This document shows, in pieces, positions 1 through 21,560 of a DNA stretch of 64,000 nucleotides. Position numbers and translations under genes: made by a program. Within the stretch, counting starts at the first letter, position 1; every line of letters starts with the position of its first letter. The notes beneath the pieces were generated by a model. It saw only the letters and a list, made by a program, of their open reading frames with translations, had not been told where the DNA came from and did no database searches. The stretch spans positions 1 through 64,000 of the IMG/VR virus record IMGVR_UViG_3300034012_003212; one strand, 5' to 3'.

Positions 1-207
1 TCAAGGTCTTCAGGGATTGCAGGGAACTCAAGGAACTCAAGGAACCCAAGGTCTTCAGGGTCTTCAGGGTCTTCAGGGTCTTCAAGGTCTTCAGGGATTG
101 CAGGGAACTCAAGGAACTCAAGGAACCCAAGGTCTTCAGGGTCTTCAGGGTCTTCAGGGTCTTCAAGGTCTTCAGGGATTGCAGGGAACTCAAGGAACTC
201 AAGGAAC
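1..207 (+). repeat. Perfect 81-bp tandem repeat (about 2.5 copies) within collagen coding region
   Basis: Identical sequence restarts at 1, 82 and 163; the first mismatch is at 208. Confidence 0.9.
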
Positions 208-7688: not shown

Positions 7689-7886
7689 ATGGACTTAGAG
7701 AATGCTAATGTTAAGATTTTTAACTTCTTGCGCACCTCTGTGTGTAACTCCGTGTATGACTCCATATGGGACCCCAGAAGGGACTCCACATGGGACTCCG
7801 TATGGGACTCCTTGAGGAATCCCGTGTTGGACTCCGTTGTTATTAGATTACAGGAACCCATAAGAGAAGAAAGGAAACGAGGATGA
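7689..7886 (+). CDS. SVxx array unit 1 (65 aa)
   Basis: MDLENA head; start reassigned from 7530. Confidence 0.7.
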   Translation: MDLENANVKIFNFLRTSVCNSVYDSIWDPRRDSTWDSVWDSLRNPVLDSVVIRLQEPIREERKRG

Positions 7887-8086
7887 ACTTAAAGAATATT
7901 GATATTAAGATTGGTAGGTCCATGCGGATCTCCGTGGAAAAATCCGCGTGGAACTACGTGTTGGACTCCGTGAGGCACTCCGAGTGGAATTCCGTGTGGT
8001 GGTCCGTGAGTTACTACGTGGAGAATTCCGCGTTGGACTCCGTGAATGATGGACTACAAAGACTCATAAGACAAGAAAGGAAATAA
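7883..8086 (+). CDS. SVxx array unit 2 (67 aa)
   Basis: MNL head, SVxx core, ATGA overlap. Confidence 0.75.
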   Translation: MNLKNIDIKIGRSMRISVEKSAWNYVLDSVRHSEWNSVWWSVSYYVENSALDSVNDGLQRLIRQERK

Positions 8087-8088
8087 GG

Positions 8089-8283
8089 ATGAACTTAGAG
8101 AATGTTAACTATAAGATCTGTGATTCTGCGTATGTATCCTCGTGGAACTCTGTGAGGGGCTCTGTGGTGGTCTCCGTGTGGAACTCTGTGAGTAACTCCG
8201 TGAGTAACTCCGTGAATGATAGACTACAAGAACCCATAAGAGAAGAAAGAGGAAGCGAAGATGAACTTAGAGAATGTTGGTAA
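8089..8283 (+). CDS. SVxx array unit 3 (64 aa, shifted tail)
   Basis: Tail runs 23 nt into unit 4. Confidence 0.7.
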   Translation: MNLENVNYKICDSAYVSSWNSVRGSVVVSVWNSVSNSVSNSVNDRLQEPIREERGSEDELRECW

Positions 8284-8455
8284 AAATATAGAATTCGCAT
8301 CGATCTCCATGGAAAACTTCGCGTTGGGCTCCGTATGGGACTCCTCTATGTACTACTCCATATGTGACTCTGTGAATTTCTTCGTGGAAAACTCAGTGGA
8401 AAACTCAGTGAATTTTAGACTACAGCAACCCATAAGACAAAAAAAACAGGGATGA
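8261..8455 (+). CDS. SVxx array unit 4 (64 aa)
   Basis: Head, core and tail present. Confidence 0.75.
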   Translation: MNLENVGKNIEFASISMENFALGSVWDSSMYYSICDSVNFFVENSVENSVNFRLQQPIRQKKQG

Positions 8456-8646
8456 ACTTAAAGGATGTTGAAGATAAGATTGAGGAGTCTGTGTCATACC
8501 CGTTGCACTCCGTGAGGGACTCCGTGAGGAATTCCATTAGCAACTCCATATGGCCCTCCAATTGGTACTCCGTGTGGAACTCCGTGGGGGGCTCTGTGAA
8601 TATTGGACTAAAAGGATCCATAAGAAAAGAAAGGAAACGAGGATGA
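8452..8646 (+). CDS. SVxx array unit 5 (64 aa)
   Basis: Head, core and tail; ATGA overlap. Confidence 0.75.
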   Translation: MNLKDVEDKIEESVSYPLHSVRDSVRNSISNSIWPSNWYSVWNSVGGSVNIGLKGSIRKERKRG

Positions 8647-8855
8647 ACTTAGAGAATGTTGGTAGGAAGATTTGGGATTACCCTAGGTCAGACTATATGT
8701 TGAACGATGTGTTTGATTGTGTGTATGGATCCGCCTTTACCTTCGCGCGGGACTCCGCGTCCGGTTTCGGGAGGGACTCTGTGTTTGAACCCGCGTGGGA
8801 ATCCGTGTATTATGGAGTGCAAGAACCCATAAGACAAGAATGGGAACAAGAATGA
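8643..8855 (+). CDS. SVxx array unit 6 (70 aa)
   Basis: Internal start of track ORF 8550-8855. Confidence 0.75.
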   Translation: MNLENVGRKIWDYPRSDYMLNDVFDCVYGSAFTFARDSASGFGRDSVFEPAWESVYYGVQEPIRQEWEQE

Positions 8856-9061
8856 ACTTAGAGAATGTTGATAATAAGATTGGTAAGTCCGTGGAGAACT
8901 CCGTTTTGGGCTCCGTGTGGAACTCCGTGTGGAACTCAATGGAGGACTCTGCGGGGAACTCCGTATGGTGCTTTGTGGGGGACTCTGTGGAGGACTCTGT
9001 GCAGAATGGACTACAAGAATCCATAAGAGAAGAGAGAAAACGAAAGAGGAAACGAGGATGA
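8852..9061 (+). CDS. SVxx array unit 7 (69 aa)
   Basis: Identical to unit 21. Confidence 0.75.
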   Translation: MNLENVDNKIGKSVENSVLGSVWNSVWNSMEDSAGNSVWCFVGDSVEDSVQNGLQESIREERKRKRKRG

Positions 9062-9267
9062 ACTTAGAGAATGTTAATTATAAGATCTGTGATTCTGCGT
9101 ATGTATACTCGTGGAGCTCCGTGAGGGACTCTGCGTGGAACTCTGTGATGGACTCCGTGTGGGGGGTGGTGTGGGCATCCGTGGATCATCCCATGAGTAA
9201 CTCCGTGGGGGACTCTGTGGATTTTGGACTACAAAGACCCATACGAGAAGAAAGGAGTCAGGGATGA
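9058..9267 (+). CDS. SVxx array unit 8 (69 aa)
   Basis: 5' part nearly identical to unit 3. Confidence 0.75.
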   Translation: MNLENVNYKICDSAYVYSWSSVRDSAWNSVMDSVWGVVWASVDHPMSNSVGDSVDFGLQRPIREERSQG

Positions 9268-9482
9268 ACTTAGAGAATGTTGGATATATGAGTGTGAATT
9301 ATGTGAGTGACTTGGTGAGTTTATCCATGAGAGACTCCGCGTGGAACTCCGTGTGGGACTTTTTGAGGGACTCCGTGGGGAACTCTGTGAGGGACTCTGT
9401 GGTGGTCTCCGTGTGGAACCCCGTGTGGGACTCCGTGAATATTGGACTACAAGAACCCATAAGAGAAGAAAGGGGCCGGTAA
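9264..9482 (+). CDS. SVxx array unit 9 (72 aa)
   Basis: TAA stop abuts the next ATG. Confidence 0.75.
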   Translation: MNLENVGYMSVNYVSDLVSLSMRDSAWNSVWDFLRDSVGNSVRDSVVVSVWNPVWDSVNIGLQEPIREERGR

Positions 9483-9692
9483 ATGAACTTAGAGAATGTT
9501 AGAGATAAGATTGGGAACTCCGTGAGTATCTCCGTGAATAACTCCGTGTGGTTGTCCGTGTGGAACTCCGTGGATAACACCATGTGGAACTCCGTGAGGA
9601 ACTCCGTGTATTTCTCCATGGGGAACTCCGTGAGAAACTCCGTGAATTTTAGACTACAAAGACCCATACGAGAAGAAAGGAGTCAGGGATGA
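9483..9692 (+). CDS. SVxx array unit 10 (69 aa)
   Basis: Head, core and tail present. Confidence 0.75.
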   Translation: MNLENVRDKIGNSVSISVNNSVWLSVWNSVDNTMWNSVRNSVYFSMGNSVRNSVNFRLQRPIREERSQG

Positions 9693-9874
9693 ACTTAGAG
9701 AATGTTAAAGATAATATTATGAACTCCGTGAGGAACTCCGTGTATTTCTCCGTGGGGAACTCCGTGTGGGACTCCGTGTGGTACTCCGTGTGGCGCTCCA
9801 CGCAGAACTCCGTGAGGAAGTCCGTGGATATTGGACTAACAGAACCCATACTACGAGAAAGGAGACGAAGATGA
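9689..9874 (+). CDS. SVxx array unit 11 (61 aa)
   Basis: ATGA overlap. Confidence 0.75.
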   Translation: MNLENVKDNIMNSVRNSVYFSVGNSVWDSVWYSVWRSTQNSVRKSVDIGLTEPILRERRRR

Positions 9875-10077
9875 ACTTAAAGAGTATTGAGGATGAGATT
9901 CATTCATGGATTGACTCCGTGGAGAGTTCCCTGAAAAACTCCATGTGGAATTACGTGTGTATTTACAGGTCGTATTCCGTGTGCGACCCCGTGTATAGCT
10001 TTGTTGAGAACTCTGTGCGGGATTCTGTTTATATTAGAATACAAAGACCTATAATAGAAGAATTAAAACGAAGATGA
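9871..10077 (+). CDS. SVxx array unit 12 (68 aa)
   Basis: ATGA overlap. Confidence 0.75.
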   Translation: MNLKSIEDEIHSWIDSVESSLKNSMWNYVCIYRSYSVCDPVYSFVENSVRDSVYIRIQRPIIEELKRR

Positions 10078-10250
10078 ACTTAAAGAATGTTGAAAATATG
10101 ATTTGGGAATCCGTGAGGGACTCCTTGTGGTATCCCATGCGGATATCTATATCAAACTCCGTGAAAAAGTCCGTGTGGGTCTCCGCTAGGGAATCTGTTT
10201 ATTATGGAGGAATACAACTACCCATAGCACGAGAAAGGAGACGGGGATGA
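10074..10250 (+). CDS. SVxx array unit 13 (58 aa)
   Basis: Hand translated; below track cutoff. Confidence 0.75.
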   Translation: MNLKNVENMIWESVRDSLWYPMRISISNSVKKSVWVSARESVYYGGIQLPIARERRRG

Positions 10251-10444
10251 ACTTAGAAGATGTTGGTAGGAAGATTGGGGGCTCCATGGATGACTTCGTG
10301 ATGAACTCCGTGTGGTGGTCCGTGGCCAACTCCGTGTGGAACTCCGTGTGGAACTCCGTGTACAACCCCGTGTGGAACTTTGTGAGGAACTCGGTGTATG
10401 ACGGAATAAAACTACCCATAAGAGTAGAGAGGAAACGAAGATGA
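10247..10444 (+). CDS. SVxx array unit 14 (65 aa)
   Basis: ATGA overlap. Confidence 0.75.
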   Translation: MNLEDVGRKIGGSMDDFVMNSVWWSVANSVWNSVWNSVYNPVWNFVRNSVYDGIKLPIRVERKRR

Positions 10445-10650
10445 ACTTAGAGCATGTTGAAAATAAGATTCGGGATTTTGTAAATATCTCAGTGGGGTTT
10501 TCTGTACAGGAATTTGCGTGGAACACCATGACTAAACCCGCGTGGTATTCCATATGGTGCCCCGCGTATAGCTCTGTGGAGAACTCCATGTGGGACTCCG
10601 TGAATATTGGACTACAAAAACCTGTAAGAGAAGAAAGAAAACAAAGATGA
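10441..10650 (+). CDS. SVxx array unit 15 (69 aa)
   Basis: ATGA overlap. Confidence 0.75.
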   Translation: MNLEHVENKIRDFVNISVGFSVQEFAWNTMTKPAWYSIWCPAYSSVENSMWDSVNIGLQKPVREERKQR

Positions 10651-10820
10651 ACTTAGTGCATGTTGGACATAAGATTGTGAAGTCCGTGGAGAACTCCGTG
10701 TGGAACTCCGTGTGGAACTCCGTGTGGAACTCCGTGAGGTTCTCCGTGTGGGACTCCGTTTTGGACTCCGTGAAGACTAGACTACAATTACCCATAAGAG
10801 AAGAAAGGGTACAGGGATGA
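10647..10820 (+). CDS. SVxx array unit 16 (57 aa)
   Basis: ATGA overlap. Confidence 0.75.
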   Translation: MNLVHVGHKIVKSVENSVWNSVWNSVWNSVRFSVWDSVLDSVKTRLQLPIREERVQG

Positions 10821-11011
10821 ACTCAGAGAATGTTAGTGGGAAGATTTGGAAGTTTCGGAGCTCCGTAGATAACTCCGTGTGGAACTTCGTGTGGAACTCT
10901 GTGAGGTTCCCCGGGAGGAACTCGGTGAGGGACTCTGTGAGGAACTCCGTGTGGGACTCTGTAAATATTGGACTAAAAGAACCCATAAGAGAAGAGAGGA
11001 AACAGGGATGA
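10817..11011 (+). CDS. SVxx array unit 17 (64 aa)
   Basis: ATGA overlap. Confidence 0.75.
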   Translation: MNSENVSGKIWKFRSSVDNSVWNFVWNSVRFPGRNSVRDSVRNSVWDSVNIGLKEPIREERKQG

Positions 11012-11193
11012 ACTTAGAGAGGGTTGAAGATAAGATTTGGGGCTACGTAGAGTATTCCGTATGGATATCTGTGGATAAACTTGTGTGGGACTCCGTGTGG
11101 TACTCCGTGTTTGACTCTGTATGGAACTCCGTAAGGGACTCTGTGAATTTTAGACTCCAAGAACCCATAAGAGAAGAGATGAAACAAAGATGA
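11008..11193 (+). CDS. SVxx array unit 18 (61 aa)
   Basis: ATGA overlap. Confidence 0.75.
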   Translation: MNLERVEDKIWGYVEYSVWISVDKLVWDSVWYSVFDSVWNSVRDSVNFRLQEPIREEMKQR

Positions 11194-11387
11194 ACTTAGA
11201 GAATGTTGGAAATAAAATTAGAACAAACGTATGGTATTATGAGTGGGGACATAGTTTCAACTATGCTAATGAATCGTTAGGACGTTCCATATATTTATCT
11301 GTTTATGCCCACATCTTTGATGGCATATTGAACTCTTTATATATTAGACTCCGAGAACCCATAATAGCACAAAAGAAACAGGTATGA
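11190..11387 (+). CDS. SVxx array unit 19 (65 aa, diverged non-repetitive core)
   Basis: Head and tail conserved, core unique. Confidence 0.75.
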   Translation: MNLENVGNKIRTNVWYYEWGHSFNYANESLGRSIYLSVYAHIFDGILNSLYIRLREPIIAQKKQV

Positions 11388-11581
11388 ACTTAGAGAATGC
11401 TAGAGATAAGATTGCGAACTCATTGTGGAAATCCGTGGAGGGTCCTGTGTGTACCTCCACGGGGAAATCCGTGCAGGACGATGGGTGGTTCCCCCTGATG
11501 ACCTCCGTGTGGAACTCCGTGAGGGACTCAGTGGATATTGGACTAACAGAACCCATAAGAAAAGAAAGGAAACAAGGATGA
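11384..11581 (+). CDS. SVxx array unit 20 (65 aa)
   Basis: ATGA overlap. Confidence 0.75.
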   Translation: MNLENARDKIANSLWKSVEGPVCTSTGKSVQDDGWFPLMTSVWNSVRDSVDIGLTEPIRKERKQG

Positions 11582-11787
11582 ACTTAGAGAATGTTGATAA
11601 TAAGATTGGTAAGTCCGTGGAGAACTCCGTTTTGGGCTCCGTGTGGAACTCCGTGTGGAACTCAATGGAGGACTCTGCGGGGAACTCCGTATGGTGCTTT
11701 GTGGGGGACTCTGTGGAGGACTCTGTGCAGAATGGACTACAAGAATCCATAAGAGAAGAGAGAAAACGAAAGAGGAAACGAGGATGA
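11578..11787 (+). CDS. SVxx array unit 21 (69 aa)
   Basis: Identical to unit 7. Confidence 0.75.
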   Translation: MNLENVDNKIGKSVENSVLGSVWNSVWNSMEDSAGNSVWCFVGDSVEDSVQNGLQESIREERKRKRKRG

Positions 11788-11981
11788 ACTTAGAGAATGT
11801 TAATTATAAGATTGGGAACTCGGTGAGGGACTCTGTGAACAACTCCTTGTGGAACTCCGTGTGGGACTCTGTGTTTAACCCTGTGAGGTACTCTGTATGG
11901 GATTCTGTGAATGACTCCATGGGGAGCTCTGTGAATATTGGACTAAAAGGATCCATAAGAAAAGAAAGGAAACAAGGATGA
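11784..11981 (+). CDS. SVxx array unit 22 (65 aa)
   Basis: Tail shared with unit 5. Confidence 0.75.
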   Translation: MNLENVNYKIGNSVRDSVNNSLWNSVWDSVFNPVRYSVWDSVNDSMGSSVNIGLKGSIRKERKQG

Positions 11982-12175
11982 ACTTAGAGCCGATTGATAA
12001 CAAGATTTGGATCTCCATACGGGACTCCGTGGATAACACCGTGCGGAACTCCGTGAATAAATCCGCGTGGAACCACGTAAGTTTCTTCGTGTGGAACTCC
12101 GTTTTGGACTCCGTGTGGATCTCTGTGAATATTGGACTACAAAACCCCATAAGAGAAGAGAGGAAACAGGGATGA
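11978..12175 (+). CDS. SVxx array unit 23 (65 aa)
   Basis: ATGA overlap. Confidence 0.75.
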   Translation: MNLEPIDNKIWISIRDSVDNTVRNSVNKSAWNHVSFFVWNSVLDSVWISVNIGLQNPIREERKQG

Positions 12176-12378
12176 ACTTAGAGAGTATTGAGGATGAGAT
12201 TCATTCATGGATTGACTCCGTTTCGGGCTCCATGTGGAAACCTGTGTGGGATTATATGTTGTACTCCGCGAGGGGCTCCGTGTGGGCCTCCGTGATGGAC
12301 TCCGCTGGGGACTATGTGGAGGACTCTGTGCAGAATGGACTACAAGAACACATAAGAGAAGAAAGGGCCGGTAAATGA
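12172..12378 (+). CDS. SVxx array unit 24 (68 aa)
   Basis: Head shared with unit 12. Confidence 0.75.
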   Translation: MNLESIEDEIHSWIDSVSGSMWKPVWDYMLYSARGSVWASVMDSAGDYVEDSVQNGLQEHIREERAGK

Positions 12379-12581
12379 ACTTAGAGAATGTTGATAAACC
12401 ATATTTTCACATTGTAGATAACACCCTATGGAATCGTGTGTACTCAGTATGGAAATCGTCATTAACAGTTTCCTCACATAATTTCGTGCGTGATTCTGTA
12501 GATATATCCATGAGATCTGTACAACTCTCGTTGCACGAGGGCGTATTAAGACCCGTAAGAGAAGAAAGAAAACAAGGATGA
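12375..12581 (+). CDS. SVxx array unit 25 (68 aa, diverged core)
   Basis: Head and tail conserved. Confidence 0.75.
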   Translation: MNLENVDKPYFHIVDNTLWNRVYSVWKSSLTVSSHNFVRDSVDISMRSVQLSLHEGVLRPVREERKQG

Positions 12582-12739
12582 ACTTAGAGGATGTTGGATA
12601 TAAGATCGGTGATTCTGTGTGTGTATCCGTGTGGTATTCTGTGAGTGACTATGCGTGGAACTCTGTGCAGGACTCCATAAAGGACCTTGCGTATAATGGG
12701 CTAAAAGAACCCATAAGAGAAGATAACAAACAAAGATGA
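12578..12739 (+). CDS. SVxx array unit 26 (53 aa)
   Basis: Hand translated. Confidence 0.75.
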   Translation: MNLEDVGYKIGDSVCVSVWYSVSDYAWNSVQDSIKDLAYNGLKEPIREDNKQR

Positions 12740-12909
12740 ACTTAGAGAATGTTGGAACTAAGGTTTGGGGCTCCGTGTGGAACTCCATGAGGTTCTTCGA
12801 GAGGGACTCCATGTGGGACTCCGTGAGGGACTCTATGTATAACTCCGTGTGGGACTCCGTGTTCGATGGGTTACAACTACCAATAAGAAAAGAGGGGAAA
12901 CAAGGATGA
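12736..12909 (+). CDS. SVxx array unit 27 (57 aa)
   Basis: Hand translated; head shared with unit 31. Confidence 0.75.
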   Translation: MNLENVGTKVWGSVWNSMRFFERDSMWDSVRDSMYNSVWDSVFDGLQLPIRKEGKQG

Positions 12910-13103
12910 ACTTAGAGAATGTTAAAGATAGGATTTGGTACTCCGTGGGGAACTCCGTGAGTGACCCCATGCGGAAATCCGTGTGGGACTTTTTGAGGGA
13001 CTCCGTGAAGTATCCTGTGTATAACTCCGTGGTGGTCTCCGTGTGGGACTCCGTGGATATTGGACTACAAGAACCCATAAGAGAAGAAAGGGCACAGGGA
13101 TGA
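12906..13103 (+). CDS. SVxx array unit 28 (65 aa)
   Basis: ATGA overlap. Confidence 0.75.
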   Translation: MNLENVKDRIWYSVGNSVSDPMRKSVWDFLRDSVKYPVYNSVVVSVWDSVDIGLQEPIREERAQG

Positions 13104-13270
13104 ACTTAGAATCGGTTGGTGTGAAGATAAGAGACACCGTGTGGAACTCCGTGTGGCCCTCCAATTGGTACTCCGTGTGGAACTCCGTGTTTGACCCCGT
13201 GAGGAACTCCGTGTGGGACTCCTTGAATATTGGACTACAAGAACCCATAAGAGAAGAAAGGGGCCGGTAA
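13100..13270 (+). CDS. SVxx array unit 29 (56 aa)
   Basis: Core shared with unit 33. Confidence 0.75.
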   Translation: MNLESVGVKIRDTVWNSVWPSNWYSVWNSVFDPVRNSVWDSLNIGLQEPIREERGR

Positions 13271-13528
13271 ATGAACTTAGAGAATGTTGGACATAAGATT
13301 TGGGGCTCCGTGTGGAACTCCATGAGGAAATTCGTGGGTATCTCCGTGAGGGTCTCTGCGTGGAAATCTGTGAGGTACTCCATGGGTATCTCCGTGGGAG
13401 ACTCTGTGTGGGACTCCGTGAAGGGCTCCGTGGGGGTCTCCGTGTTGAACTCTGTGTATGGAATACAAGACGCAATAAGAGAAGAAAGATTCAACAATGA
13501 GGCGGCACAAAAAAATATTTTTTTTTGA
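13271..13528 (+). CDS. SVxx array unit 30 (85 aa, tail broken by inserted module)
   Basis: Junction motif is cut after GAAGAAAG (13488); the frame runs on into promoter DNA. Confidence 0.7.
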   Translation: MNLENVGHKIWGSVWNSMRKFVGISVRVSAWKSVRYSMGISVGDSVWDSVKGSVGVSVLNSVYGIQDAIREERFNNEAAQKNIFF

Positions 13529-13551
13529 AAGTAGGATTGTGTATGTTTGCA
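13509..13551 (+). promoter_or_regulatory. Bacteroidota-type promoter P1 upstream of DUF6745-like gene
   Basis: A7-TA-T9-G, then TATGTTTG at 13542-13549. Confidence 0.7.
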
Positions 13552-13613
13552 TAGATATTTTTTCCAGGGAATATGAACCTGATTTGACATCAAGATTTTT
13601 TTAGTTTTCCAAT

Positions 13614-13653
13614 AAAATATTTTTTTTTGAAATCAGAAGTACGTATATTTGCA
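13614..13653 (+). promoter_or_regulatory. Bacteroidota-type promoter P2 upstream of DUF6745-like gene
   Basis: A4-TA-T9-G, then TATATTTG at 13644-13651; same spacing as P1, 102 bp downstream. Confidence 0.7.
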
Positions 13654-13699
13654 GAGGGTATAACCTCACAGTTTTTACAACTTTTTAAGGATAGCCATT

Positions 13700-14692
13700 A
13701 TGGCAAAAAAATATTCACCAAGCAATCCGCTTGAGAAACTCACTCCTGAAATGGAGGCGCTCATCCCAGTCGTCAGGGATGAATGGATTAACCGAGCATA
13801 CAAAGGGTTGAATCCAAATGATATTGACGAGAAGAAGGTGAAGAGTGCTGTACATTGGATATACAAAAAATCGGACTTGCCCAAGCCGATGGTCATCATA
13901 ACGGATTCGCCAAAAGCTGCTCAAGATGCAGCAAATGAATTGTATAAGAAGCATGTTGACCCATCAGCAAAGCGTCAGTATTTTCCATTTTCTGACAGTC
14001 TTTCTGTATCCGACTTCCGCTGGGTTGCATTCTATGATTACTTCACCCGCATTGGCGTCTTGCAAGACAAGACATTCAATAAATACATGGAGTACACAAA
14101 ACTTGGCATTTATGACACAATCAAACTTCACGATGTTTGTATTGTTGTGAAAATGCCTGAGTATGTTAAATCCACTATTGTGCGTGATGTTCGCGTCCCG
14201 CACAGTGAGGATTCTCCTGCTGTTAAGTTCATTGATGGTGATTCTTATTATTTCTGGAATGGTACATTGGTTCCGGAGAAATGGATCATGCGCAAAGACG
14301 AGATCACACAGAATGATATCATCTCAGAAGACAATGCCGAAAAGCGTCGTTGTCTCATGGAAATCCTTGGAGCAAAGAGGTATTATGACATCATCTCTGA
14401 TGGAAAGGGTCTTAAACTCATTGACGAGGACACAGACAATCAGGGATTCCCTATGAGATTGTATGAGACAACAAAGAATGATTCTATCGTCAACAAAAAG
14501 GTTCAATTCCTTGAAGTGACTGATCCATCAACAGGGCGAGTGTATAACATCTACCCTCCTAATCAGAATGCAAAGAATGTATGGGATGCGAAGGCACAGA
14601 CATTCAGTTCTGAGAAATTGTACGTCCGTCAGGGTGATGTTGGACTGACGAAGATAGGATACGATGAAGCGCATCCTGTGCAAGAAACATAA
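13700..14692 (+). CDS. DUF6745-like protein (330 aa)
   Basis: KLTPE.EALIP..RDEWI, DSP, W.AFYDYF, YFWNG..VPE.WI, I..E.NAEKRRCLME.LG, V.DPSTGR.Y...P and C-terminal RQGDV motifs. Confidence 0.7.
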   Translation: MAKKYSPSNPLEKLTPEMEALIPVVRDEWINRAYKGLNPNDIDEKKVKSAVHWIYKKSDLPKPMVIITDSPKAAQDAANELYKKHVDPSAKRQYFPFSDSLSVSDFRWVAFYDYFTRIGVLQDKTFNKYMEYTKLGIYDTIKLHDVCIVVKMPEYVKSTIVRDVRVPHSEDSPAVKFIDGDSYYFWNGTLVPEKWIMRKDEITQNDIISEDNAEKRRCLMEILGAKRYYDIISDGKGLKLIDEDTDNQGFPMRLYETTKNDSIVNKKVQFLEVTDPSTGRVYNIYPPNQNAKNVWDAKAQTFSSEKLYVRQGDVGLTKIGYDEAHPVQET

Positions 14693-14709
14693 TGTAATTT
14701 TTATAGTAT

Positions 14710-14718
14710 AATATATAC
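14710..14718 (+). promoter_or_regulatory. Candidate late-promoter motif (AATATATAC)
   Basis: ATATATA motif upstream of 14752; AGGAG at 14742-14746. Confidence 0.4.
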
Positions 14719-14751
14719 ACCTAATTAACTTTTTTTTCAATAGGAGATTTT

Positions 14752-15048
14752 ATGGATAAGTCAGAAAGAATCCGCAGAGTGATTGCTCGTGGTGAGCATT
14801 CCAACCATTCACATGTTGTGTGTGGTGATGATGTAACAATTCGTGAAGAGAAGGGCACAATTTTTGTCACAGTTGGCAATAGTGGTGCAGTTCTTCGTCA
14901 CTTGCTTGAGATGGAGTACATCGAAACAGGCAAGGAAGTATGGACAAAGGAACATGAAGATGTGCCGCTTCCTCAGGGTGAATATAAATTTGTTCCCCAG
15001 ATTGAGTACAATCCGCTCGATGAAACCATCCAAAGAACAAAGGACTAA
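14752..15048 (+). CDS. Small His-motif beta protein, usual DUF6745 partner
   Basis: ARGE.SNHSH...LRH...EHEDVPLPQGEYK..PQIEYNP......KD resembles the GE.tGHaH/HeEH..i.lp.G.Y...Q.EY partner family (recalled). Confidence 0.7.
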   Translation: MDKSERIRRVIARGEHSNHSHVVCGDDVTIREEKGTIFVTVGNSGAVLRHLLEMEYIETGKEVWTKEHEDVPLPQGEYKFVPQIEYNPLDETIQRTKD

Positions 15049-15075
15049 TCATATTAGTTCAAAAGATTGGTACAT

Positions 15076-15109
15076 AAAAATGGCACGCCTTAAACGTGCC
15101 ATTTTTTTT
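15076..15109 (+). terminator. Intrinsic terminator (possibly bidirectional)
   Basis: A5-TGGCACG-CCTTAAA-CGTGCCA-T8. Confidence 0.85.
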
Positions 15110-15125
15110 AACAGAGGAAACAAAG

Positions 15126-15323
15126 ATGAACTTAGAGAATGTTGGAACTAAGGTTTGGGACTCCATGTGGAACTCCATGAGGTTCTTCGAGAGGGACTCC
15201 ATGTGGGACTCCGTGTGGAACTCCGTGTGGGGTTCCGTAAGGGTCTCCGTGTGGGACTCTGTGTGGGATTCTGTTTATATTAGAATACAAAGACCTATAA
15301 TAGAAGAATTAAAACGAAGATGA
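15126..15323 (+). CDS. SVxx array unit 31 (65 aa)
   Basis: Preceded by the 3' half of a junction motif. Confidence 0.75.
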   Translation: MNLENVGTKVWDSMWNSMRFFERDSMWDSVWNSVWGSVRVSVWDSVWDSVYIRIQRPIIEELKRR

Positions 15324-15505
15324 ACTTAGAGAATGTTGGATATGAGATTTGGAAATCCGTGAGTTCCTCCGTGAGGAACTCTGTGGATGACTCCGCGTGG
15401 AACTCCGTGTGGGGTTCCGTGAGGGTCTCCGTGTGGGACTCTGTGCGGGATTCTGTTTATATTAGAATACAAAGACCTATAATAGAAGAATTAAAACGAA
15501 GATGA
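15320..15505 (+). CDS. SVxx array unit 32 (61 aa)
   Basis: Tail shared with units 12 and 31. Confidence 0.75.
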   Translation: MNLENVGYEIWKSVSSSVRNSVDDSAWNSVWGSVRVSVWDSVRDSVYIRIQRPIIEELKRR

Positions 15506-15723
15506 ACTTAGAGATTGTTGAAGATAAGATTTGGAGCTCCGTGGAGTATTCCGTGTGGATCTCTATGGATAAAATCGTGTGGAACTCCGTGTGGCCCTCC
15601 AATTGGTACTCCGTGTGGAACTCCGTGTTTGACCCCGTGAGGAACTCTGTGATGGACCCTGTGAGGGACTCTGTTTATGGTGGATTACAAATACCCATAA
15701 GACAAGAAAGGGAACGAGGATGA
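15502..15723 (+). CDS. SVxx array unit 33 (73 aa)
   Basis: ATGA overlap. Confidence 0.75.
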   Translation: MNLEIVEDKIWSSVEYSVWISMDKIVWNSVWPSNWYSVWNSVFDPVRNSVMDPVRDSVYGGLQIPIRQERERG

Positions 15724-15905
15724 ACTTAGAGAATGTTAAAGATAAGATTTGGAACTCCGTGAGGAACTCCGTGTATTTCTCCATGAAGAACTCCATGAGG
15801 AAATCTGCATGGAACTCCGTGATGGGCTCTGTGTGGGCCTTTGTGTGGGACTCTGTTTATGGTGGACTACAAGAACCCATAAGAGAAGAAAGGAGACAAG
15901 GATGA
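15720..15905 (+). CDS. SVxx array unit 34 (61 aa)
   Basis: ATGA overlap. Confidence 0.75.
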   Translation: MNLENVKDKIWNSVRNSVYFSMKNSMRKSAWNSVMGSVWAFVWDSVYGGLQEPIREERRQG

Positions 15906-16108
15906 ACTTAGAGCAGGTTGAATATAAGATTGGTAACTCCTTGTATGACTCCAAGTGGAACTCTGTGAGGTTCTCCGTGAGGAACTCCGTGTGGAAGTCC
16001 CTGTTGAGCGTGTGGGACTCCGTGTGGAAATCCGTGTTGGTCTCCGTGAGGGACTCTGTGCAGAATGGACTAAAAAACCCCATAAGAGAAGAATGGGGGC
16101 AAGAATGA
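15902..16108 (+). CDS. SVxx array unit 35 (68 aa)
   Basis: ATGA overlap. Confidence 0.75.
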   Translation: MNLEQVEYKIGNSLYDSKWNSVRFSVRNSVWKSLLSVWDSVWKSVLVSVRDSVQNGLKNPIREEWGQE

Positions 16109-16302
16109 ACTTAGATCTGGTTGGTGGGAAGATTTGGGATTCCATGTTGAACTCCGTGTGGGAATCCGTGTGGAACTCCGTGTTTGACTCCGTGAGGGAC
16201 TCTGTGGGGGGCTCCGTGAAGTATTCCGCATGGAACTCCGTGTGGGACTCTGTGAAAGTTGGACTACAAGAACCCATAAGAGAAGAAAGGAAACGAGGAT
16301 GA
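16105..16302 (+). CDS. SVxx array unit 36 (65 aa)
   Basis: ATGA overlap. Confidence 0.75.
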   Translation: MNLDLVGGKIWDSMLNSVWESVWNSVFDSVRDSVGGSVKYSAWNSVWDSVKVGLQEPIREERKRG

Positions 16303-16484
16303 ACTTAGAGCATGTTGAATATAAGATTGGTAACTCCGTGTATGACTCCATGTGGAACTCTGTGTGGGGTTCCGTGAGGGTCTCCGTGTGGGACTCCGTG
16401 GTGGTTTCCGTGGCGTATTTTGTGGGGGACTCCGTGAATATTAGACTACAGATACCCATAAGACAAGAAAGGGAACAGGAATGA
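16299..16484 (+). CDS. SVxx array unit 37 (61 aa)
   Basis: ATGA overlap. Confidence 0.75.
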   Translation: MNLEHVEYKIGNSVYDSMWNSVWGSVRVSVWDSVVVSVAYFVGDSVNIRLQIPIRQEREQE

Positions 16485-16735
16485 ACTTAGAGCCGGTTGA
16501 ATATAAGATTGGTAACGCCGTGTATGACTCCAAGTGGAACTCTGTGAGGTTCTCCGTGTGGAACTCCGTGTGGAAGTCCCTGTTGAGCGTGTGGGACTCC
16601 GTGTGGAAATCCGTGTTGGTCTCCGTGAGGGACTCTGTGGGGGGCTCCGTGAAGTATTCCGCATGGAACTCCGTGAGGGATTCTGTGTATTTTGGACTAA
16701 CAGAACCCATAAGACAAGAAAGGAAACGGGGATGA
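16481..16735 (+). CDS. SVxx array unit 38 (84 aa, chimera of units 35 and 36)
   Basis: 5' core matches unit 35 and 3' core matches unit 36. Confidence 0.75.
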   Translation: MNLEPVEYKIGNAVYDSKWNSVRFSVWNSVWKSLLSVWDSVWKSVLVSVRDSVGGSVKYSAWNSVRDSVYFGLTEPIRQERKRG

Positions 16736-16851
16736 ACTTAGAGCATGTTGGTAGAAAGATTTGGGAATCCTTGAAGAACTTTGCGTGGGATTTTGTGGGC
16801 ATTGGACACAAAAACACCCATAAGACGAGAAAGAGAAAAATGGGGACGAGG
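16732..16851 (+). pseudogene. SVxx array unit 39, shortened and frameshifted, fused in frame to unit 40
   Basis: GGACACAAAAACACCCAT has one extra nt versus canonical GGACTACAAGAACCCAT; no stop before 17025. Confidence 0.65.
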
Positions 16852-17025
16852 ATGAACTTAGAGAATGTTGGTAGGAAGATTGATATCCGCATGTGGTTCT
16901 CCGTGAGGATATCCGCGGAGAACCACACATTAAACTCCGTGGATATCTTCGTGTATTTCCCCGTGAGGGACTCTGTGTATGATGGAATACAACTACCCAT
17001 AAGAGAAGAAAAGAAACAAGGATGA
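16852..17025 (+). CDS. SVxx array unit 40 (57 aa)
   Basis: Own ATG at 16852. Confidence 0.7.
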   Translation: MNLENVGRKIDIRMWFSVRISAENHTLNSVDIFVYFPVRDSVYDGIQLPIREEKKQG

Positions 17026-17177
17026 ACTTAGAGAATGTTGGATATAAGATTTGGGATTTCGCGCCCATCCGATTGGAACAACCCACATGGTACTCTGTGA
17101 TGGAACCTGTGAATATTAGACTAATACAATCCATAAGTAACGAAAGGGAACACGAAGATGAACTTAGAGAGTGTTAG
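17022..17177 (+). CDS. SVxx array unit 41 (51 aa, shifted tail)
   Basis: Hand translated; overlaps unit 42 by 20 nt. Confidence 0.65.
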   Translation: MNLENVGYKIWDFAPIRLEQPTWYSVMEPVNIRLIQSISNEREHEDELREC

Positions 17178-17355
17178 TTGGAAGATTTCAAGATGTGTAC
17201 ATTCTTATGTGTATATTCCTGCTGAAAGTTTCATATTGAACTCCGTGAATGTCTCACGTTGGATTTCTATATGGGATTTTACTATGGATCCGTTATTACA
17301 ATCGGTTAACAACAGGATACAAACGCATATAAGACAAGAAAGGGGACGGGGATGA
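17158..17355 (+). CDS. SVxx array unit 42 (65 aa, diverged core)
   Basis: Head and tail conserved. Confidence 0.75.
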   Translation: MNLESVSWKISRCVHSYVYIPAESFILNSVNVSRWISIWDFTMDPLLQSVNNRIQTHIRQERGRG

Positions 17356-17486
17356 ACTTAGAGAATGTTAAAGATAAGATTTGGAACTCCGTGAGGAACT
17401 CCGTGGAGATTTCCGTGTGGGACTCTGTGGGAAAATCTGTGGATGGACTACACGGATCCATAATAAAAGAAAGGGAACAGGGATGA
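17352..17486 (+). CDS. SVxx array unit 43 (44 aa)
   Basis: Hand translated. Confidence 0.7.
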   Translation: MNLENVKDKIWNSVRNSVEISVWDSVGKSVDGLHGSIIKEREQG

Positions 17487-17689
17487 ACTTAAATGCTTTT
17501 ACTACAAATAATATAAAGGTGAGTAACTTCATGTGGAACTCCGTAGCGGACTCCGTGTGGAACTCCGTGTTGAACTCCGTGGAGATTTCCGTGTGGGGCT
17601 CCGTGTATAACTCCGTGAGGGACCCTGTGTGGAACTCTGTTTATGATGGACTTCAAGAACCCATAAGAGAAGAAAGGAAAAAAAGATGA
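17483..17689 (+). CDS. SVxx array unit 44 (68 aa)
   Basis: ATGA overlap. Confidence 0.75.
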   Translation: MNLNAFTTNNIKVSNFMWNSVADSVWNSVLNSVEISVWGSVYNSVRDPVWNSVYDGLQEPIREERKKR

Positions 17690-17883
17690 ACTTAGAGAAT
17701 GTTGAAGATAAGATTTGGGAATCCGTAGGGAACTCCGTGTGGGACTCCGTGGTGGTCTCCGTGAGGGAGTCCGTGGTGGTCTCCGTGAGGGGCTCTGTGG
17801 CGTATTCTATGGGGTACTTTGTGGCGAACTCCATGGATATTGGACTGCAAGAACCCATAAGAGAACAAAGGGAAAGAAGATGA
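17686..17883 (+). CDS. SVxx array unit 45 (65 aa)
   Basis: ATGA overlap. Confidence 0.75.
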   Translation: MNLENVEDKIWESVGNSVWDSVVVSVRESVVVSVRGSVAYSMGYFVANSMDIGLQEPIREQRERR

Positions 17884-18065
17884 ACTTGGCGTATGTTGGT
17901 ATTGAGATTGGGGACTACGTGATGGTCTCCGCGCTGGAGTCCGTGAGGATTTTCGTGCCAGACTCTGTAAGTGAGTCTGTGGATGACTTCGTGTGGGTCT
18001 CCTTGAGGGCCTCCGTGAATTTTAGACTACAAAGACCCATACGAGAAGAAAGGAGTCAGGGATGA
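17880..18065 (+). CDS. SVxx array unit 46 (61 aa)
   Basis: ATGA overlap. Confidence 0.75.
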   Translation: MNLAYVGIEIGDYVMVSALESVRIFVPDSVSESVDDFVWVSLRASVNFRLQRPIREERSQG

Positions 18066-18296
18066 ACTTAGAGAATGTTAGTGTTAAGATTTGGAACTCC
18101 GTGTGGTGGTCCGTGGGAAACTCCGTGTGGGTCTCCATGCGGGACTTTTTGAGGAGGGATTCCGTGGGGAACTCTGTGAGGGACTCCGTGGTGGTCTCCG
18201 TGAGGGACTCCGTGGATCTCCGTGAGGAACTCTGTATATAACTCAGTGGATTTTAGACTACAAGAACCCATAAGACAAGAAAGGAGACAGGGATGA
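18062..18296 (+). pseudogene. SVxx array unit 47, frameshifted
   Basis: Frameshift near GTGGATCTCCGT (~18215) gives TAA at 18239-18241; the tail motif is intact in another frame. Confidence 0.7.
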
Positions 18297-18487
18297 ACTT
18301 AGAGAATGTTAAAGATAAAATTTGGAACTCCGTGAGGAACTCCGTGTATATCTCCATGGAGAACTCCGTGTGGTACTCCATGAGGAAATCTGCATGGAAC
18401 TCCGTGAGGAACTCTGTGTGGGACTTTGTGTGGGACTCTGTGGATGGACTACAAGAACCCATAAGACAAGAAAGGAGACAGGGATGA
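18293..18487 (+). CDS. SVxx array unit 48 (64 aa)
   Basis: Close to unit 34. Confidence 0.75.
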   Translation: MNLENVKDKIWNSVRNSVYISMENSVWYSMRKSAWNSVRNSVWDFVWDSVDGLQEPIRQERRQG

Positions 18488-18621
18488 ACTTAGAGAATGT
18501 TAGAGATAGGATTTGGTACTCCGTGAGGAACTCCGTGATGGGCTCTGCGAGGATCTCTGTGAGGGATTCTGTGTATTTTGGACTAACAGAACCCATAAGA
18601 CAAGAAAGGAGACAGGGATGA
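18484..18621 (+). CDS. SVxx array unit 49 (45 aa)
   Basis: ATGA overlap. Confidence 0.75.
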   Translation: MNLENVRDRIWYSVRNSVMGSARISVRDSVYFGLTEPIRQERRQG

Positions 18622-18791
18622 ACTTAGAGAATGTTAGAGATAGGATTTGGTACTCCGTGAGGAACTCCGTGTATTTCTCCATGGAGAACTCCGCGGGGTA
18701 CTCCGTGGATAAATCCGTGAGGGACCCTGTGAGGGACTCTGTGGATTTTGGACTAGCAGCACCCATAAGACAAGAAAGGAGACAGGGATGA
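18618..18791 (+). CDS. SVxx array unit 50 (57 aa)
   Basis: Head identical to unit 49. Confidence 0.75.
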   Translation: MNLENVRDRIWYSVRNSVYFSMENSAGYSVDKSVRDPVRDSVDFGLAAPIRQERRQG

Positions 18792-18979
18792 ACTTAGAGA
18801 ATGTTAGAGATAAAATTTGGAACTCCGTGGATACCCCCGTGTGGCACTCCGTTTTGGACTCTGTGAATAACTCCTTTTTCTTGAGGGAATCCGTGTGGAA
18901 CTCTGCGAGGAACTCCGTGTGGAAGTCTGTGAATACTGGACTACAGTACCTAATAAGACGAGAAAGGGAACAGGAATGA
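18788..18979 (+). CDS. SVxx array unit 51 (63 aa)
   Basis: ATGA overlap. Confidence 0.75.
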   Translation: MNLENVRDKIWNSVDTPVWHSVLDSVNNSFFLRESVWNSARNSVWKSVNTGLQYLIRREREQE

Positions 18980-19158
18980 ACTTAGAGAATGTTAGAGATA
19001 TGATTTGGTACATAGGAGACGATGTTTTCTCGAGATTTGTTAAAATCCTCTGGTACCCGCCAGCAGAATCAGGGTATCAAAACATATTGACTCCTATGTG
19101 TGACTGCTTATACAATAGACTACAGACATCTATAAGACACCAAAGATGGCTCGGATGA
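18976..19158 (+). CDS. SVxx array unit 52 (60 aa, diverged core)
   Basis: Head conserved, core unique. Confidence 0.7.
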   Translation: MNLENVRDMIWYIGDDVFSRFVKILWYPPAESGYQNILTPMCDCLYNRLQTSIRHQRWLG

Positions 19159-19280
19159 ACTTAGATAATATTTGGAAATCCATGAGGCGTTCCGTGGATA
19201 AATCCATGAATAACTCCGCGTGGAACTCCGTGAATTTTAGACTGCAAAACCCCGTAAGACGAGAAAGAAGACATGGATGA
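19155..19280 (+). CDS. SVxx array unit 53 (41 aa)
   Basis: Hand translated; shortest intact unit. Confidence 0.7.
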   Translation: MNLDNIWKSMRRSVDKSMNNSAWNSVNFRLQNPVRRERRHG

Positions 19281-19474
19281 ATTTAACTGATGTTGATGGT
19301 ATAACCCAACATTTCATATGGCGTCTTATTACACGGCCCGCATGGGATTCTATTGTGAATTTTACAGGTGGATCCATGAGATCAGTTGATCACCCGGTGA
19401 AGGAATCGGTATGTAAAAGTCTACAAATGAAAATAAGATTCAACGTGCCGGTGGTAAAAATTCTATCGGATTAA
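19277..19474 (+). CDS. SVxx array unit 54 (65 aa, highly diverged)
   Basis: MNLTDV head with ATGA overlap. Confidence 0.6.
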   Translation: MNLTDVDGITQHFIWRLITRPAWDSIVNFTGGSMRSVDHPVKESVCKSLQMKIRFNVPVVKILSD

Positions 19475-19538: not shown

Positions 19539-19760
19539 ATGAATTTACAAAACGCTGATTGTTTAAATGGATCAGTATTAGAATCCATTCTAAAATCTTG
19601 TTTTAGTTCCATCGAGAAACCTTTAGTGGAAATCACTTTGAGTTCAGTCGACCCCAAGATGTTAGAATATATTTGGGAAAACACGAGAGGAATGTTGTGG
19701 AACTCTGTTCTTTTAAGATTACAAAATCCAATAAGGGACGATTTCGCTACCAAAATTTAG
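19539..19760 (+). CDS. SVxx array unit 55 (73 aa, highly diverged terminal copy)
   Basis: MNLQNA head and WNSVLLRLQNPIR tail. Confidence 0.6.
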   Translation: MNLQNADCLNGSVLESILKSCFSSIEKPLVEITLSSVDPKMLEYIWENTRGMLWNSVLLRLQNPIRDDFATKI

Positions 19761-20990: not shown

Positions 20991-21009
20991 GAGGAAATTT
21001 GTATTTTTG
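20972..21009 (+). promoter_or_regulatory. Bacteroidota-type promoter
   Basis: A7T5 tract, then TATTTTTG at 21002-21009. Confidence 0.55.
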
Positions 21010-21041
21010 CCCATGTATTTGAAACTATACGGGATCGTGCA

Positions 21042-21560
21042 ATGTTGAAGATCATATCGGGAGGTCAAACTGGTGTTGATACTGCCGGACTCATGGCGGC
21101 AAGGAACTGTGGATTGACGACAGGAGGATACATGCCAAAGGGGTTCATTACCGAGAGTTCCCCTGCTCCGCACTACAAAAACCTCTATGGAATCCAGGAA
21201 CTAGGTTCAAGCGACTACACAGTAAGGACCGACATGAACATAAAGAGTTCTGACGTGACCATGATATTCCACAATGGAACTGTGGGAAGAGGGACAAGAC
21301 GAACCATGGACAAATGTTTATCGTTCGGGAAGAAGCACTTTGTCTACAATATGCTCGAGAACATGAACGACCTAAATGGATTCATCGATATCATAGCAAA
21401 TGATCTGATCACATGTCGTGAAAAATTCGGAGATGATTTTACTGTCAACATAGCAGGAACAAGAGGATCGAAGCTTGGCATGAAGAATGAAAACATACTT
21501 GTGATAGTCCTGACAGAAGCCTTCAACAAATATAAACTTCACACTCAATCATATCAATAA
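21042..21560 (+). CDS. SLOG-family protein (putative molybdenum carrier / YpsA-like)
   Basis: KIISGGQTGVD.AGL, RT.MNI..SD and VNIAGTR motifs. Confidence 0.8.
   Translation: MLKIISGGQTGVDTAGLMAARNCGLTTGGYMPKGFITESSPAPHYKNLYGIQELGSSDYTVRTDMNIKSSDVTMIFHNGTVGRGTRRTMDKCLSFGKKHFVYNMLENMNDLNGFIDIIANDLITCREKFGDDFTVNIAGTRGSKLGMKNENILVIVLTEAFNKYKLHTQSYQ

What the first reader, a model, noticed from the sequence alone, without database searches (positions are those of the whole stretch)
13474..15129. The 1.6-kb DUF6745 module interrupts a junction motif in its middle
Seen: unit 30 ends ...ATAAGAGAAGAAAG (13488) and then breaks into unrelated DNA. Block 2 begins ...AG|GAAACAAAGATGAAC (about 15117). Joined, the halves give ATAAGAGAAGAAAGGAAACAAAGATGAAC, a canonical junction (compare 10626-10652), with 2-3 bp AG/AGA microhomology. 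The intervening DNA is self-contained: twin promoters, two genes and a terminator. Inference: the junction is a recombination or insertion hotspot, and the module entered or can excise like a cassette.
Basis: partly seen in the sequence, partly recalled or inferred. Interest (0 to 1): 0.75.

Follow-up and report, generated by a model that had tools for sequence, protein, structure and literature searches.

The report
Partner operon embedded in minigene array
A 1.6-kb two-gene operon does split a repeat junction cleanly in a phage's array of 53 tiny genes, but it looks like the array's own long-linked partner, fixed in place by one old rearrangement, rather than a mobile cassette.

Summary
Observation confirmed. 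Unit 30 stops matching the canonical junction at 13488. Unit 31's leader starts matching at 15117. Removing the 1,628 bp between them restores a canonical junction: right length, IREERKQR stop, ATGA overlap, 58.2 bits against a median of 56.3.

- Every assembly of this phage that I could read has identical boundaries.
- No empty site, second copy, terminal repeat or recombinase was found.
- A sister lineage (DUF6745 78% identical) shares the right boundary.
- The insert uses the phage's own promoter type and base composition.

The insert is not unrelated DNA. Forty of 88 DUF6745 homologues carry internal tetrapeptide repeats of the kind that make up the array units. The window's protein belongs to a repeat-less clade. 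In all five lineages of that clade whose downstream DNA is visible, the order is DUF6745, a roughly 100-aa partner, a terminator, then an array of stand-alone repeat minigenes. A complex model places a unit on DUF6745 around the site where homologues carry their repeats (0.87; best control 0.01).

Best reading: an anciently linked operon embedded by one old rearrangement, while flanking units turn over by homologous recombination. The function is unknown.

The parts
7689..13488 (+). Array block 1. It holds 30 tandem minigenes of about 45-72 aa, each of the form MNLENV..KIW, then (x-S-V-W/R/G)n, then GLQEPIREERKQG. Stops and starts overlap as ATGA.
   Evidence: TRF finds 12-nt (4-aa) periods. 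Every unit is an open frame.
13271..13528 (+). Unit 30, the last unit of block 1. Its canonical tail is cut after IREER and reads 12 further codons into the insert. The tail is distinctive: GIQDAIREER instead of GLQEPIREER.
13486..13489 (.). Left joint, where the array junction ends and the insert begins. Its position is ambiguous within AG or AGA.
   Evidence: The bases are identical in L003 to L008.
13508..13554 (+). Promoter-like element P1: a T run, about 14 nt of spacer, then TATGTTTGCA.
   Evidence: About 10 sites in the 260-kb genome share this motif class.
13610..13656 (+). Promoter-like element P2, 81% identical to P1. Only its -7 box (GTACGTATATTTG) is matched upstream of the gene in lineage B.
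13700..14692 (+). DUF6745 protein, 330 aa. It is the repeat-less form. Homologues carry tetrapeptide repeats between about residues 81 and 94.
14752..15048 (+). Conserved 98-aa partner protein. It is all-beta, with the invariant motif ARGE.S.H.H. It lies next to DUF6745 across the family.
15076..15113 (+). Intrinsic terminator: 12-bp perfect stem, 7-nt loop and a T run.
   Evidence: The 141-nt right end is 93% conserved with lineage B.
15115..15118 (.). Right joint, where the insert ends and the leader of unit 31 begins.
15117..19280 (+). Array block 2. It holds 23 units. Unit 31 (15126-15323) comes first. Two degenerate units follow, at 19279-19474 and 19539-19760.

Best explanation
The 1,628 bp at 13489-15116 are not a foreign cassette. 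They are the array's own partner operon: DUF6745 plus a conserved gene of about 100 aa, with phage-type promoters and a terminator.

Shown:
- In the clade of repeat-less DUF6745 genes, the order is operon, terminator, then an array of stand-alone tetrapeptide-repeat minigenes.
- Many other DUF6745 proteins carry such repeats inside the protein, at one fixed place.

Inferred:
- In the common ancestor of this phage and its sister lineage, one DNA rearrangement left units on both sides of the operon. It was either an insertion of the operon into a unit junction, or a duplication and deletion that placed units upstream of it. The left joint dates from that event.
- The operon has stayed fixed since. 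The highly similar units around it are continually gained, lost and exchanged by homologous recombination, both within a genome and between co-circulating phages. That recombination can rewrite the flanks only up to the edge of homology, so the two half-junctions stay sharp.
- The minigene products dock on DUF6745 in trans, taking the place of the internal repeats. The array would then be a library of alternative subunits for one scaffold.
For: - Clean complementarity of the half-junctions.
- Identical joints in seven other contigs of this phage, while the neighbouring units differ. L004 lacks units 7-23 and unit 31.
- Sister lineage B has the operon inside the same kind of array, with a homologous right end (141 nt, 93% identical). 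Its first downstream unit differs among the window, L004, L012 and L039. Its DUF6745 is 78% identical, its partner 84%, and the operon DNA about 73%.
- Units 98-99% identical between the two lineages (window 16732, 16852, 17686) lie downstream of the operon here and upstream of it in B. Unit exchange is therefore more recent than operon divergence.
- The order operon, terminator, first unit is seen in the window, B, L010, L151 and L153/L155. All five fall in one clade with 100/100 support.
- 40 of 88 homologues carry internal repeats starting at about residues 67-97.
- The partner gene lies next to DUF6745 in 27 of 39 loci examined.
- The complex model scores 0.87 against a best control of 0.01. 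That mark was reached by 58 of 80 solved complexes and 2 of 110 mismatched pairs. Contacts on DUF6745 flank residues 81-94.
- The promoter motif class recurs about 10 times in the genome. GC of the two genes is 0.42-0.43 against 0.416 for the genome.
- There are no recombinases and no end repeats.
Against: - The left joint is not shared with lineage B, whose left flank is a degenerate 77-aa unit and non-homologous DNA. At least one lineage was remodelled, and the age of this exact joint is bounded only by the strain-level contigs.
- The direction and mechanism of the rearrangement cannot be told from these data.
- Absence of empty sites rests on contigs chosen for carrying the operon and on Logan unitigs, which drop rare variants.
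- Binding is a model's confidence computed with my own alignments. Paralogous units give little co-evolutionary signal.
- There is no promoter between the terminator and unit 31, so how block 2 is expressed is unexplained.
- Neither protein has a recognisable fold match. Foldseek gave E >= 0.04 for DUF6745 and >= 0.5 for the partner. VIA-align gave Z <= 5.0 and <= 3.3. The biochemical function is unknown.
Confidence: 0.6

Rival explanations
1. Active mobile cassette. The stretch is an element that inserts into and excises from array junctions by site-specific or homing recombination.
For: The junction is interrupted cleanly and without any loss of bases, with 2-3 nt of ambiguity. The stretch is a self-contained transcription unit. 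The operon sits among non-orthologous units in the two lineages.
Against: There are no terminal direct or inverted repeats and no att-like sites. There is no match to Phage_integrase, Resolvase, HNH, HNH_3, GIY-YIG or TnpB-like domains, and the SegE search was uninformative. Neither encoded protein resembles a nuclease or recombinase fold. The genome has a single copy. The joints are identical in all strain contigs, and no empty-site joint was found. The right end is shared with a lineage about 27% diverged in operon DNA. The different unit neighbours are explained by unit turnover, which is seen directly between strains.
Confidence: 0.06
2. No insertion into a junction ever happened. A tandem array begins and ends at the same phase of its repeat. 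If an ancestral segment (operon, whole array, and a little downstream flank) was tandemly duplicated and the first operon copy was later lost, block 1's last unit would end exactly where block 2's first unit begins. Bases from 13489 to about 13600, which hold P1, would then be the old downstream flank of the array.
For: The right boundary has the same layout (terminator, a leader of about 15-18 nt, first unit) in lineages where the operon sits at the 5' edge of the array (L153, L151). It therefore looks ancestral rather than an insertion scar. Only the -7 box of P2 is matched in lineage B, and nothing of P1 or the DNA left of it. The genome has one operon copy, so an 'insertion' also needs a second event to remove the donor copy. 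L010's last unit also reads into a different tail.
Against: No homologue of 13489-13600 lies beyond the distal end of any array I could read. Blocks 1 and 2 show no collinear duplicate structure. No remnant of a first operon copy lies upstream of block 1. The model needs two events, although none of them requires a coincidence.
Confidence: 0.22
3. Moron-type acquisition. A foreign promoter-gene-terminator unit from an unrelated phage landed in the array by illegitimate recombination and has no functional link to it.
For: The anatomy of own promoters plus own terminator is typical of phage morons. The joints have only 2-3 nt of microhomology.
Against: The link between operon and array is conserved in five lineages of one clade. 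The repeat motif is shared with homologues. Binding to a unit is predicted. The promoters are of the resident phage's class, and the composition equals the genome's.
Confidence: 0.07

Closest known systems
Pfam PF20530 (DUF6745) proteins with internal tetrapeptide repeats, for example P0017, P0021, P0028 and P0081 from metagenomes
   Same: The N- and C-terminal domains are homologous (E from 1e-88 down to 1e-18). In 40 of 88 homologues, repeats of the form x-x-[S/Q/N]-[V/L] sit at the position that corresponds to residues 81-94 here. The partner of about 100 aa is often adjacent.
   Different: The window's protein has no repeats. Instead, 53 separate minigenes that encode such repeats surround it. 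No function is published for the family; no paper mentions DUF6745 or PF20530.
Mycobacteriophage Tweety gp54 (PMC2884959; PMC9262239), a tunable counter-defence protein
   Same: Unique N- and C-terminal regions flank 40-48 tetrapeptide repeats with a variable W/G position. The number of repeats changes readily, and that tunes the protein's activity against a prophage defence. This is the same architecture as the repeat-bearing DUF6745 proteins.
   Different: There is no detectable homology (no Pfam match; hhalign probability 0.1%; BLASTP E = 11). Its repeat is AA[G/W/Q][S/Y], not [D/N]SV[W/R/G]. Its repeats are in cis within one gene, not in an array of separate genes. The counter-defence role is only an analogy here.
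Phage morons (a promoter-gene-terminator unit inserted between genes)
   Same: A self-contained transcription unit lies between two genes of an operon-like array.
   Different: Composition and promoters are those of the resident genome. The unit is conserved in linkage with the array across lineages, and it is not absent from any relative I could read.
Integron gene cassettes, IS elements and free-standing homing endonuclease genes
   Same: A discrete block interrupts a conserved site.
   Different: There is no attC site, no integrase, no terminal inverted repeats or convincing target duplication, no transposase, no endonuclease domain and no second copy.

Membership tests
Pfam PF20530 (DUF6745) | A match to the family HMM above the curated gathering score | tested here: met
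   42.9 bits against a cut-off of 27, E = 4.4e-11, residues 167-286. There are 88 homologues, most annotated PF20530.
Repeat-bearing DUF6745 architecture | A run of tetrapeptide repeats between the N-terminal and C-terminal domains | tested here: not met
   The window protein and its 14 closest relatives have no repeat residues. 40 of the 88 homologues do have them.
Site-specific recombination cassette (integron-like or att-flanked) | A tyrosine or serine recombinase in the genome, and recombination sites (imperfect inverted repeats or direct repeats) at the ends | tested here: not met
   PF00589 and PF00239 give no match in the 260,658-bp record. There are no end repeats beyond AG. The record is estimated to be 88% complete.
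Transposon or IS element | Terminal inverted repeats, a target-site duplication, and a transposase or TnpB | tested here: not met
   There are no terminal inverted repeats. PF07282 gives no match. Both encoded proteins lack any nuclease-like fold match. DDE transposase families were not searched individually.
Free-standing homing endonuclease gene | An HNH, GIY-YIG or LAGLIDADG endonuclease encoded in or beside the insert | tested here: not met
   PF01844, PF13392 and PF01541 give no match. The PF19835 search was uninformative because its controls also found nothing. LAGLIDADG was not searched.
Mobile element of any kind | Polymorphic presence: empty sites, other insertion sites or circular forms | tested here: inconclusive
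   None was seen in seven other contigs or in the Logan contigs of four runs. Unitigs drop rare variants, and no raw reads were available.
Phage moron | Own promoter and terminator, composition unlike the flanks, and absence from close relatives at that site | tested here: not met
   The promoter-like elements and the terminator are present. However, GC equals the genome's, the promoter class is resident, and the unit is present in all relatives I could read.
Tweety gp54-like counter-defence proteins | Sequence homology to gp54 and a demonstrated counter-defence activity | tested here: not met
   No homology. Activity cannot be tested with these tools.

The most novel reading that the evidence does not exclude
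A split, combinatorial protein system. A lineage of freshwater phages removed the variable tetrapeptide-repeat segment from its DUF6745 protein. It now encodes that segment as dozens of separate, rapidly recombining minigenes (53 here). Their products each dock on the same DUF6745 scaffold, perhaps together with the 98-aa partner. The phage would then make many 'tunings' of one effector at once, in the way Tweety gp54 is tuned by its repeat number. The operon sits inside the array because scaffold and library are inherited as one unit.
Probability: 0.3. Interest if true: 0.8.

Novelty: new variant of a known kind. Interest (0 to 1): 0.5.

Why it matters
As a mobile-element claim the finding is weak. 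The interruption is real, but it is old, fixed and unaccompanied by any mobility machinery.

The context is the valuable part. It links an uncharacterised family (DUF6745, with no literature) to tetrapeptide repeats. It shows that one phage clade carries those repeats as a large, fast-recombining array of stand-alone genes next to a repeat-less scaffold. It also gives a directly testable prediction: units bind the scaffold where the cis repeats would be.

If that prediction holds, this would be a new way for a virus to generate protein diversity, through a library of exchangeable subunits maintained by homologous recombination. It would also be a natural system for asking what tunable tetrapeptide repeats do.

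The locus is in addition a clear example of how unit turnover in a tandem gene array keeps the scars of an old rearrangement sharp, so that they look like a recent insertion.

Tried and rejected
- Searches for close relatives in the phage collection and in IMG/VR found nothing useful. These used DNA, the DUF6745 protein, the PRTase neighbour, a strict junction pattern and a three-unit-start pattern. The 109 pattern hits were chance matches, apart from L127, which is a DUF6745 with internal WDSL repeats.
- A look-up of unit 31's exact product failed, because gene callers used an upstream GTG start.
- Only Logan contigs were available, not raw reads. The 'skip' joints seen across the region have sides of 20-40 nt and extra letters between them, and they correspond to other array junctions. 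I do not count them as empty sites.
- An X3 contig with loose ends at 13593 and 13626 matches only about 34 nt, so I set it aside.
- A strict Bacteroidota promoter pattern (TTTG, 16-22 nt, TAnnTTTG) does not hit the twin elements, whose spacing is about 14 nt. The host assignment is therefore left open.
- The sigma-70 consensus scan found no more sites than in shuffled sequence.
- Sequence and fold searches for both proteins gave no credible match in PDB, PHROGs, PADLOC or NCBIfam.
- A local BLAST of the array against itself under-reported repeats, so I replaced it with a diagonal-extension script.
- The left flanks of the window and of lineage B could not be aligned meaningfully.
Full report
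**What the region is**

The window is the first 64 kb of a 260,658-bp IMG/VR virus record from lake water, estimated to be 88% complete. From 7689 to 19280 the + strand carries 53 tandem minigenes of about 45-72 aa. Each has the form MNLENV..KIW, then repeats of x-S-V-[W/R/G], then GLQEPIREERKQG. The stop of each overlaps the next start as ATGA. Two degenerate units follow, reaching 19760. The array is broken once, between unit 30 (13271-13528) and unit 31 (15126-15323).

Unit 30 follows the canonical tail up to ...ATAAGAGAAGAAAG at 13488 and then reads 12 codons into other DNA. The leader GAAACAAAG of unit 31 begins at 15117.

I built a weight matrix from 51 real junctions.
- The joined sequence scores 58.2 bits, against a median of 56.3 for real junctions.
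- The actual sequence upstream of unit 31 scores 16.0.
- Three breakpoint pairs are equivalent because of a shared AG. A fourth gives another canonical variant.
- The insert is 1,628 bp.
- The joined frame gives IREERKQR, a stop and the ATGA overlap.

The insert holds the following features.
- Two promoter-like elements that are 81%-identical copies of 47 nt.
- A DUF6745 gene.
- A 98-aa gene.
- A strong hairpin terminator.

Seven further contigs from other samples and assemblers have the same joints, and one Logan unitig spans both. The arrangement is therefore real.

**There is no sign of mobility**

- The ends carry no direct or inverted repeats beyond AG.
- The genome holds one copy.
- It gives no match to Phage_integrase, Resolvase, HNH, HNH_3, GIY-YIG or TnpB-like domains. 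The SegE search was uninformative.
- High-confidence models of both proteins (pLDDT 89.5 and 88.8) match no solved fold, nuclease or otherwise.
- The Logan contigs of four runs show no joint from 13488 to 17. The skips that appear have short sides and belong to other array junctions.
- Unit 30 has a distinctive tail (GIQDAIREER). In every locus I hold, that tail is joined to the insert and never to a canonical junction.
- The promoter motif (a T run, about 14 nt, then TAT[A/G]TTTGCA) recurs about ten times across the genome.
- GC of the two genes (0.42-0.43) equals the genome's 0.416, while the array is at 0.46.

**The flanks move; the insert does not**

Strain-level contigs are 95-96% identical across the insert yet differ in their units. 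L004 lacks units 7-23 and unit 31 and has another unit in place of units 28-29.

A sister lineage is represented by L012 and L035 to L041. Its DUF6745 is 78% identical, its partner 84%, and the operon DNA about 73%.
- Its genes outside the array are only 36-66% identical in local protein alignments and are rearranged.
- It has the operon inside the same kind of array, with 14-16 units upstream and about 10 downstream.
- The 141-nt right end, from the partner's last codons through the terminator and TTTTTTTTAACAGA[G/A]GAAAC, is 93% identical between the lineages.
- The first unit after the right end differs among the window, L004, L012 and L039.
- The left side is not homologous. Lineage B has a degenerate 77-aa unit there, and only P2's -7 box is matched.
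- Three units are 98-99% identical in DNA between the lineages (window 16732, 16852, 17686). They lie downstream of the operon here and upstream of it in lineage B.

Units are therefore exchanged and reshuffled much faster than the operon diverges. Within the window, near-identical tracts between units run across junctions and end inside unit bodies. One 98%-identical tract (12728-12825 and 15118-15215) stops exactly at the right joint. Recombination evidently rewrites the flanks up to the edge of homology.

**The insert belongs with the array**

- Of 88 DUF6745 homologues, 40 carry internal tetrapeptide repeats (DQVW, DNVW, DSVW/ASVE and similar). These start at residues 67-97, between the N-terminal and C-terminal domains.
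- The window's protein and its nearest relatives lack such repeats.
- In a maximum-likelihood tree these relatives form one clade with 100/100 support.
- In every member of that clade whose downstream DNA is visible, the order is DUF6745, a partner of about 100 aa, a hairpin terminator, a short leader, then an array of stand-alone repeat minigenes. This holds for the window, lineage B, L010, L151 and L153/L155.
- The arrays are of three sequence subtypes, with tails IREERKQG, RRQYESR and ETNVKDKQ.
- In L153 and L151 the operon sits at the 5' edge of the array, with no units seen upstream.
- The partner gene is adjacent to DUF6745 in 27 of 39 loci, including loci with repeat-bearing proteins, and can lie on either side.

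A complex prediction of DUF6745 with unit 31 gave a score of 0.87 in three runs, against 0.01 for the best of three controls. That mark was reached by 58 of 80 solved complexes and 2 of 110 mismatched pairs, and those counts hold only roughly because I supplied my own alignments. The contacts on DUF6745 (residues 71-86 and 94-115, plus the N-terminal helices) flank the point where homologues carry their repeats. This supports binding but does not demonstrate it.

**How the operon came to be embedded**

The exact complementarity of the two half-junctions points to a single clean indel at a junction. The right boundary, however, has the same layout as in lineages where the operon heads the array, so it may be ancestral.

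Because the genome has one operon copy, an insertion would also need loss of the donor copy. An alternative is duplication of the ancestral segment (operon, whole array, a little flank) followed by loss of the first operon copy. A tandem array begins and ends at the same phase, so this gives the same complementarity without any coincidence. I found no trace of the predicted flank homology. I cannot decide between the two.

Both readings agree on three points: the event was old, it happened once, and it did not involve a cassette mechanism. I give 0.6 to the embedded-partner-operon reading as a whole. Separately, I give 0.22 to the specific duplication variant in which no junction was ever interrupted, 0.06 to an active cassette and 0.07 to an unrelated moron.

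**Comparison with what is known**

No paper in the library mentions DUF6745 or PF20530. The nearest described analogue is mycobacteriophage Tweety gp54. It has unique termini flanking 40-48 tetrapeptide repeats, and changes in repeat number tune a counter-defence (PMC2884959; PMC9262239). It is not homologous to DUF6745. I therefore offer counter-defence only as an analogy.

**Open points**

- There is no promoter between the terminator and unit 31, so expression of block 2 needs read-through or something I did not detect.
- The function of both proteins is unknown.
- The host is not established.

**Verdict**

- The cassette and hotspot interpretation is not supported.
- What is there is a conserved scaffold-plus-library locus that appears to be undescribed.

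Noticed in passing
window 1-1474 (+): The open frame at 2-1474 is full of 9-nt repeats (GGTCTTCAG, GGAACTCAA) with 27-, 36- and 81-nt super-periods. This is a Gly-X-Y, collagen-like repeat, as seen in some phage fibre proteins.
   Followed up: no
window 26332-26866 (inside the minus-strand frame 26221-27183): Three overlapping arrays of a 63-nt (21-aa) tandem repeat, 72-80% matching, in a region where GC rises to 0.48.
   Followed up: no
window 16732-17025; L035:2567-2860: A truncated unit is fused in frame to the next unit, giving a 97-aa product. This odd pair is 98-99% identical in DNA between two phage lineages whose DUF6745 operons are only about 73% identical. That suggests recent exchange of array segments between phages.
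   Followed up: partly
window 8822-9086 and 11548-11812: A 265-nt segment is duplicated at 98.5% identity and spans more than one unit. Strain contig L004 joins unit 6 to unit 24, so it lacks the 17 units in between.
   Followed up: partly
genome positions about 3975, 13542, 13644, 22385, 156610 (+) and 117199, 146534, 147205, 147996, 186541 (-): A recurrent promoter-like motif: an A/T run such as AAAAATATTTTTTT, about 14 nt of spacer, then TAT[A/G]TTTGCA. The -7 box resembles the Bacteroidota TAnnTTTG element, but the spacing to the upstream TTTG is shorter than the textbook 19 nt.
   Followed up: partly
window 15020-15125 compared with L012:2084-2190: The 3' end of the partner gene, its trailer and the terminator are 93% identical between lineages, while the coding DNA of the operon is about 73% identical. 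This could reflect a constraint on an RNA element or a more recent exchange of this end.
   Followed up: no
window 19842-21560: Directly after the array lie a 382-aa protein with a phosphoribosyltransferase domain (Pfam E = 4e-7) and a 172-aa cpYpsA-family protein. A NAGPA-family gene lies at 3054-3710. In lineage B the NAGPA gene lies downstream of the array instead.
   Followed up: no
L010:3690-5255; L153:8388-11103; L151:5070-5270: Other phages carry arrays of the same design but with different unit heads and tails: MNLDNIG...RRQYESR with 14-nt overlaps, and MKQIDLYSV...ETNVKDKQ. Gene callers often miss the units or call them in the wrong frame.
   Followed up: partly
window 33561-59325 (-): A run of very large open frames on the minus strand (1328, 855, 1948, 1153, 714, 446 and 1802 aa), as in jumbo-phage structural or polymerase modules. 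None was examined.
   Followed up: no
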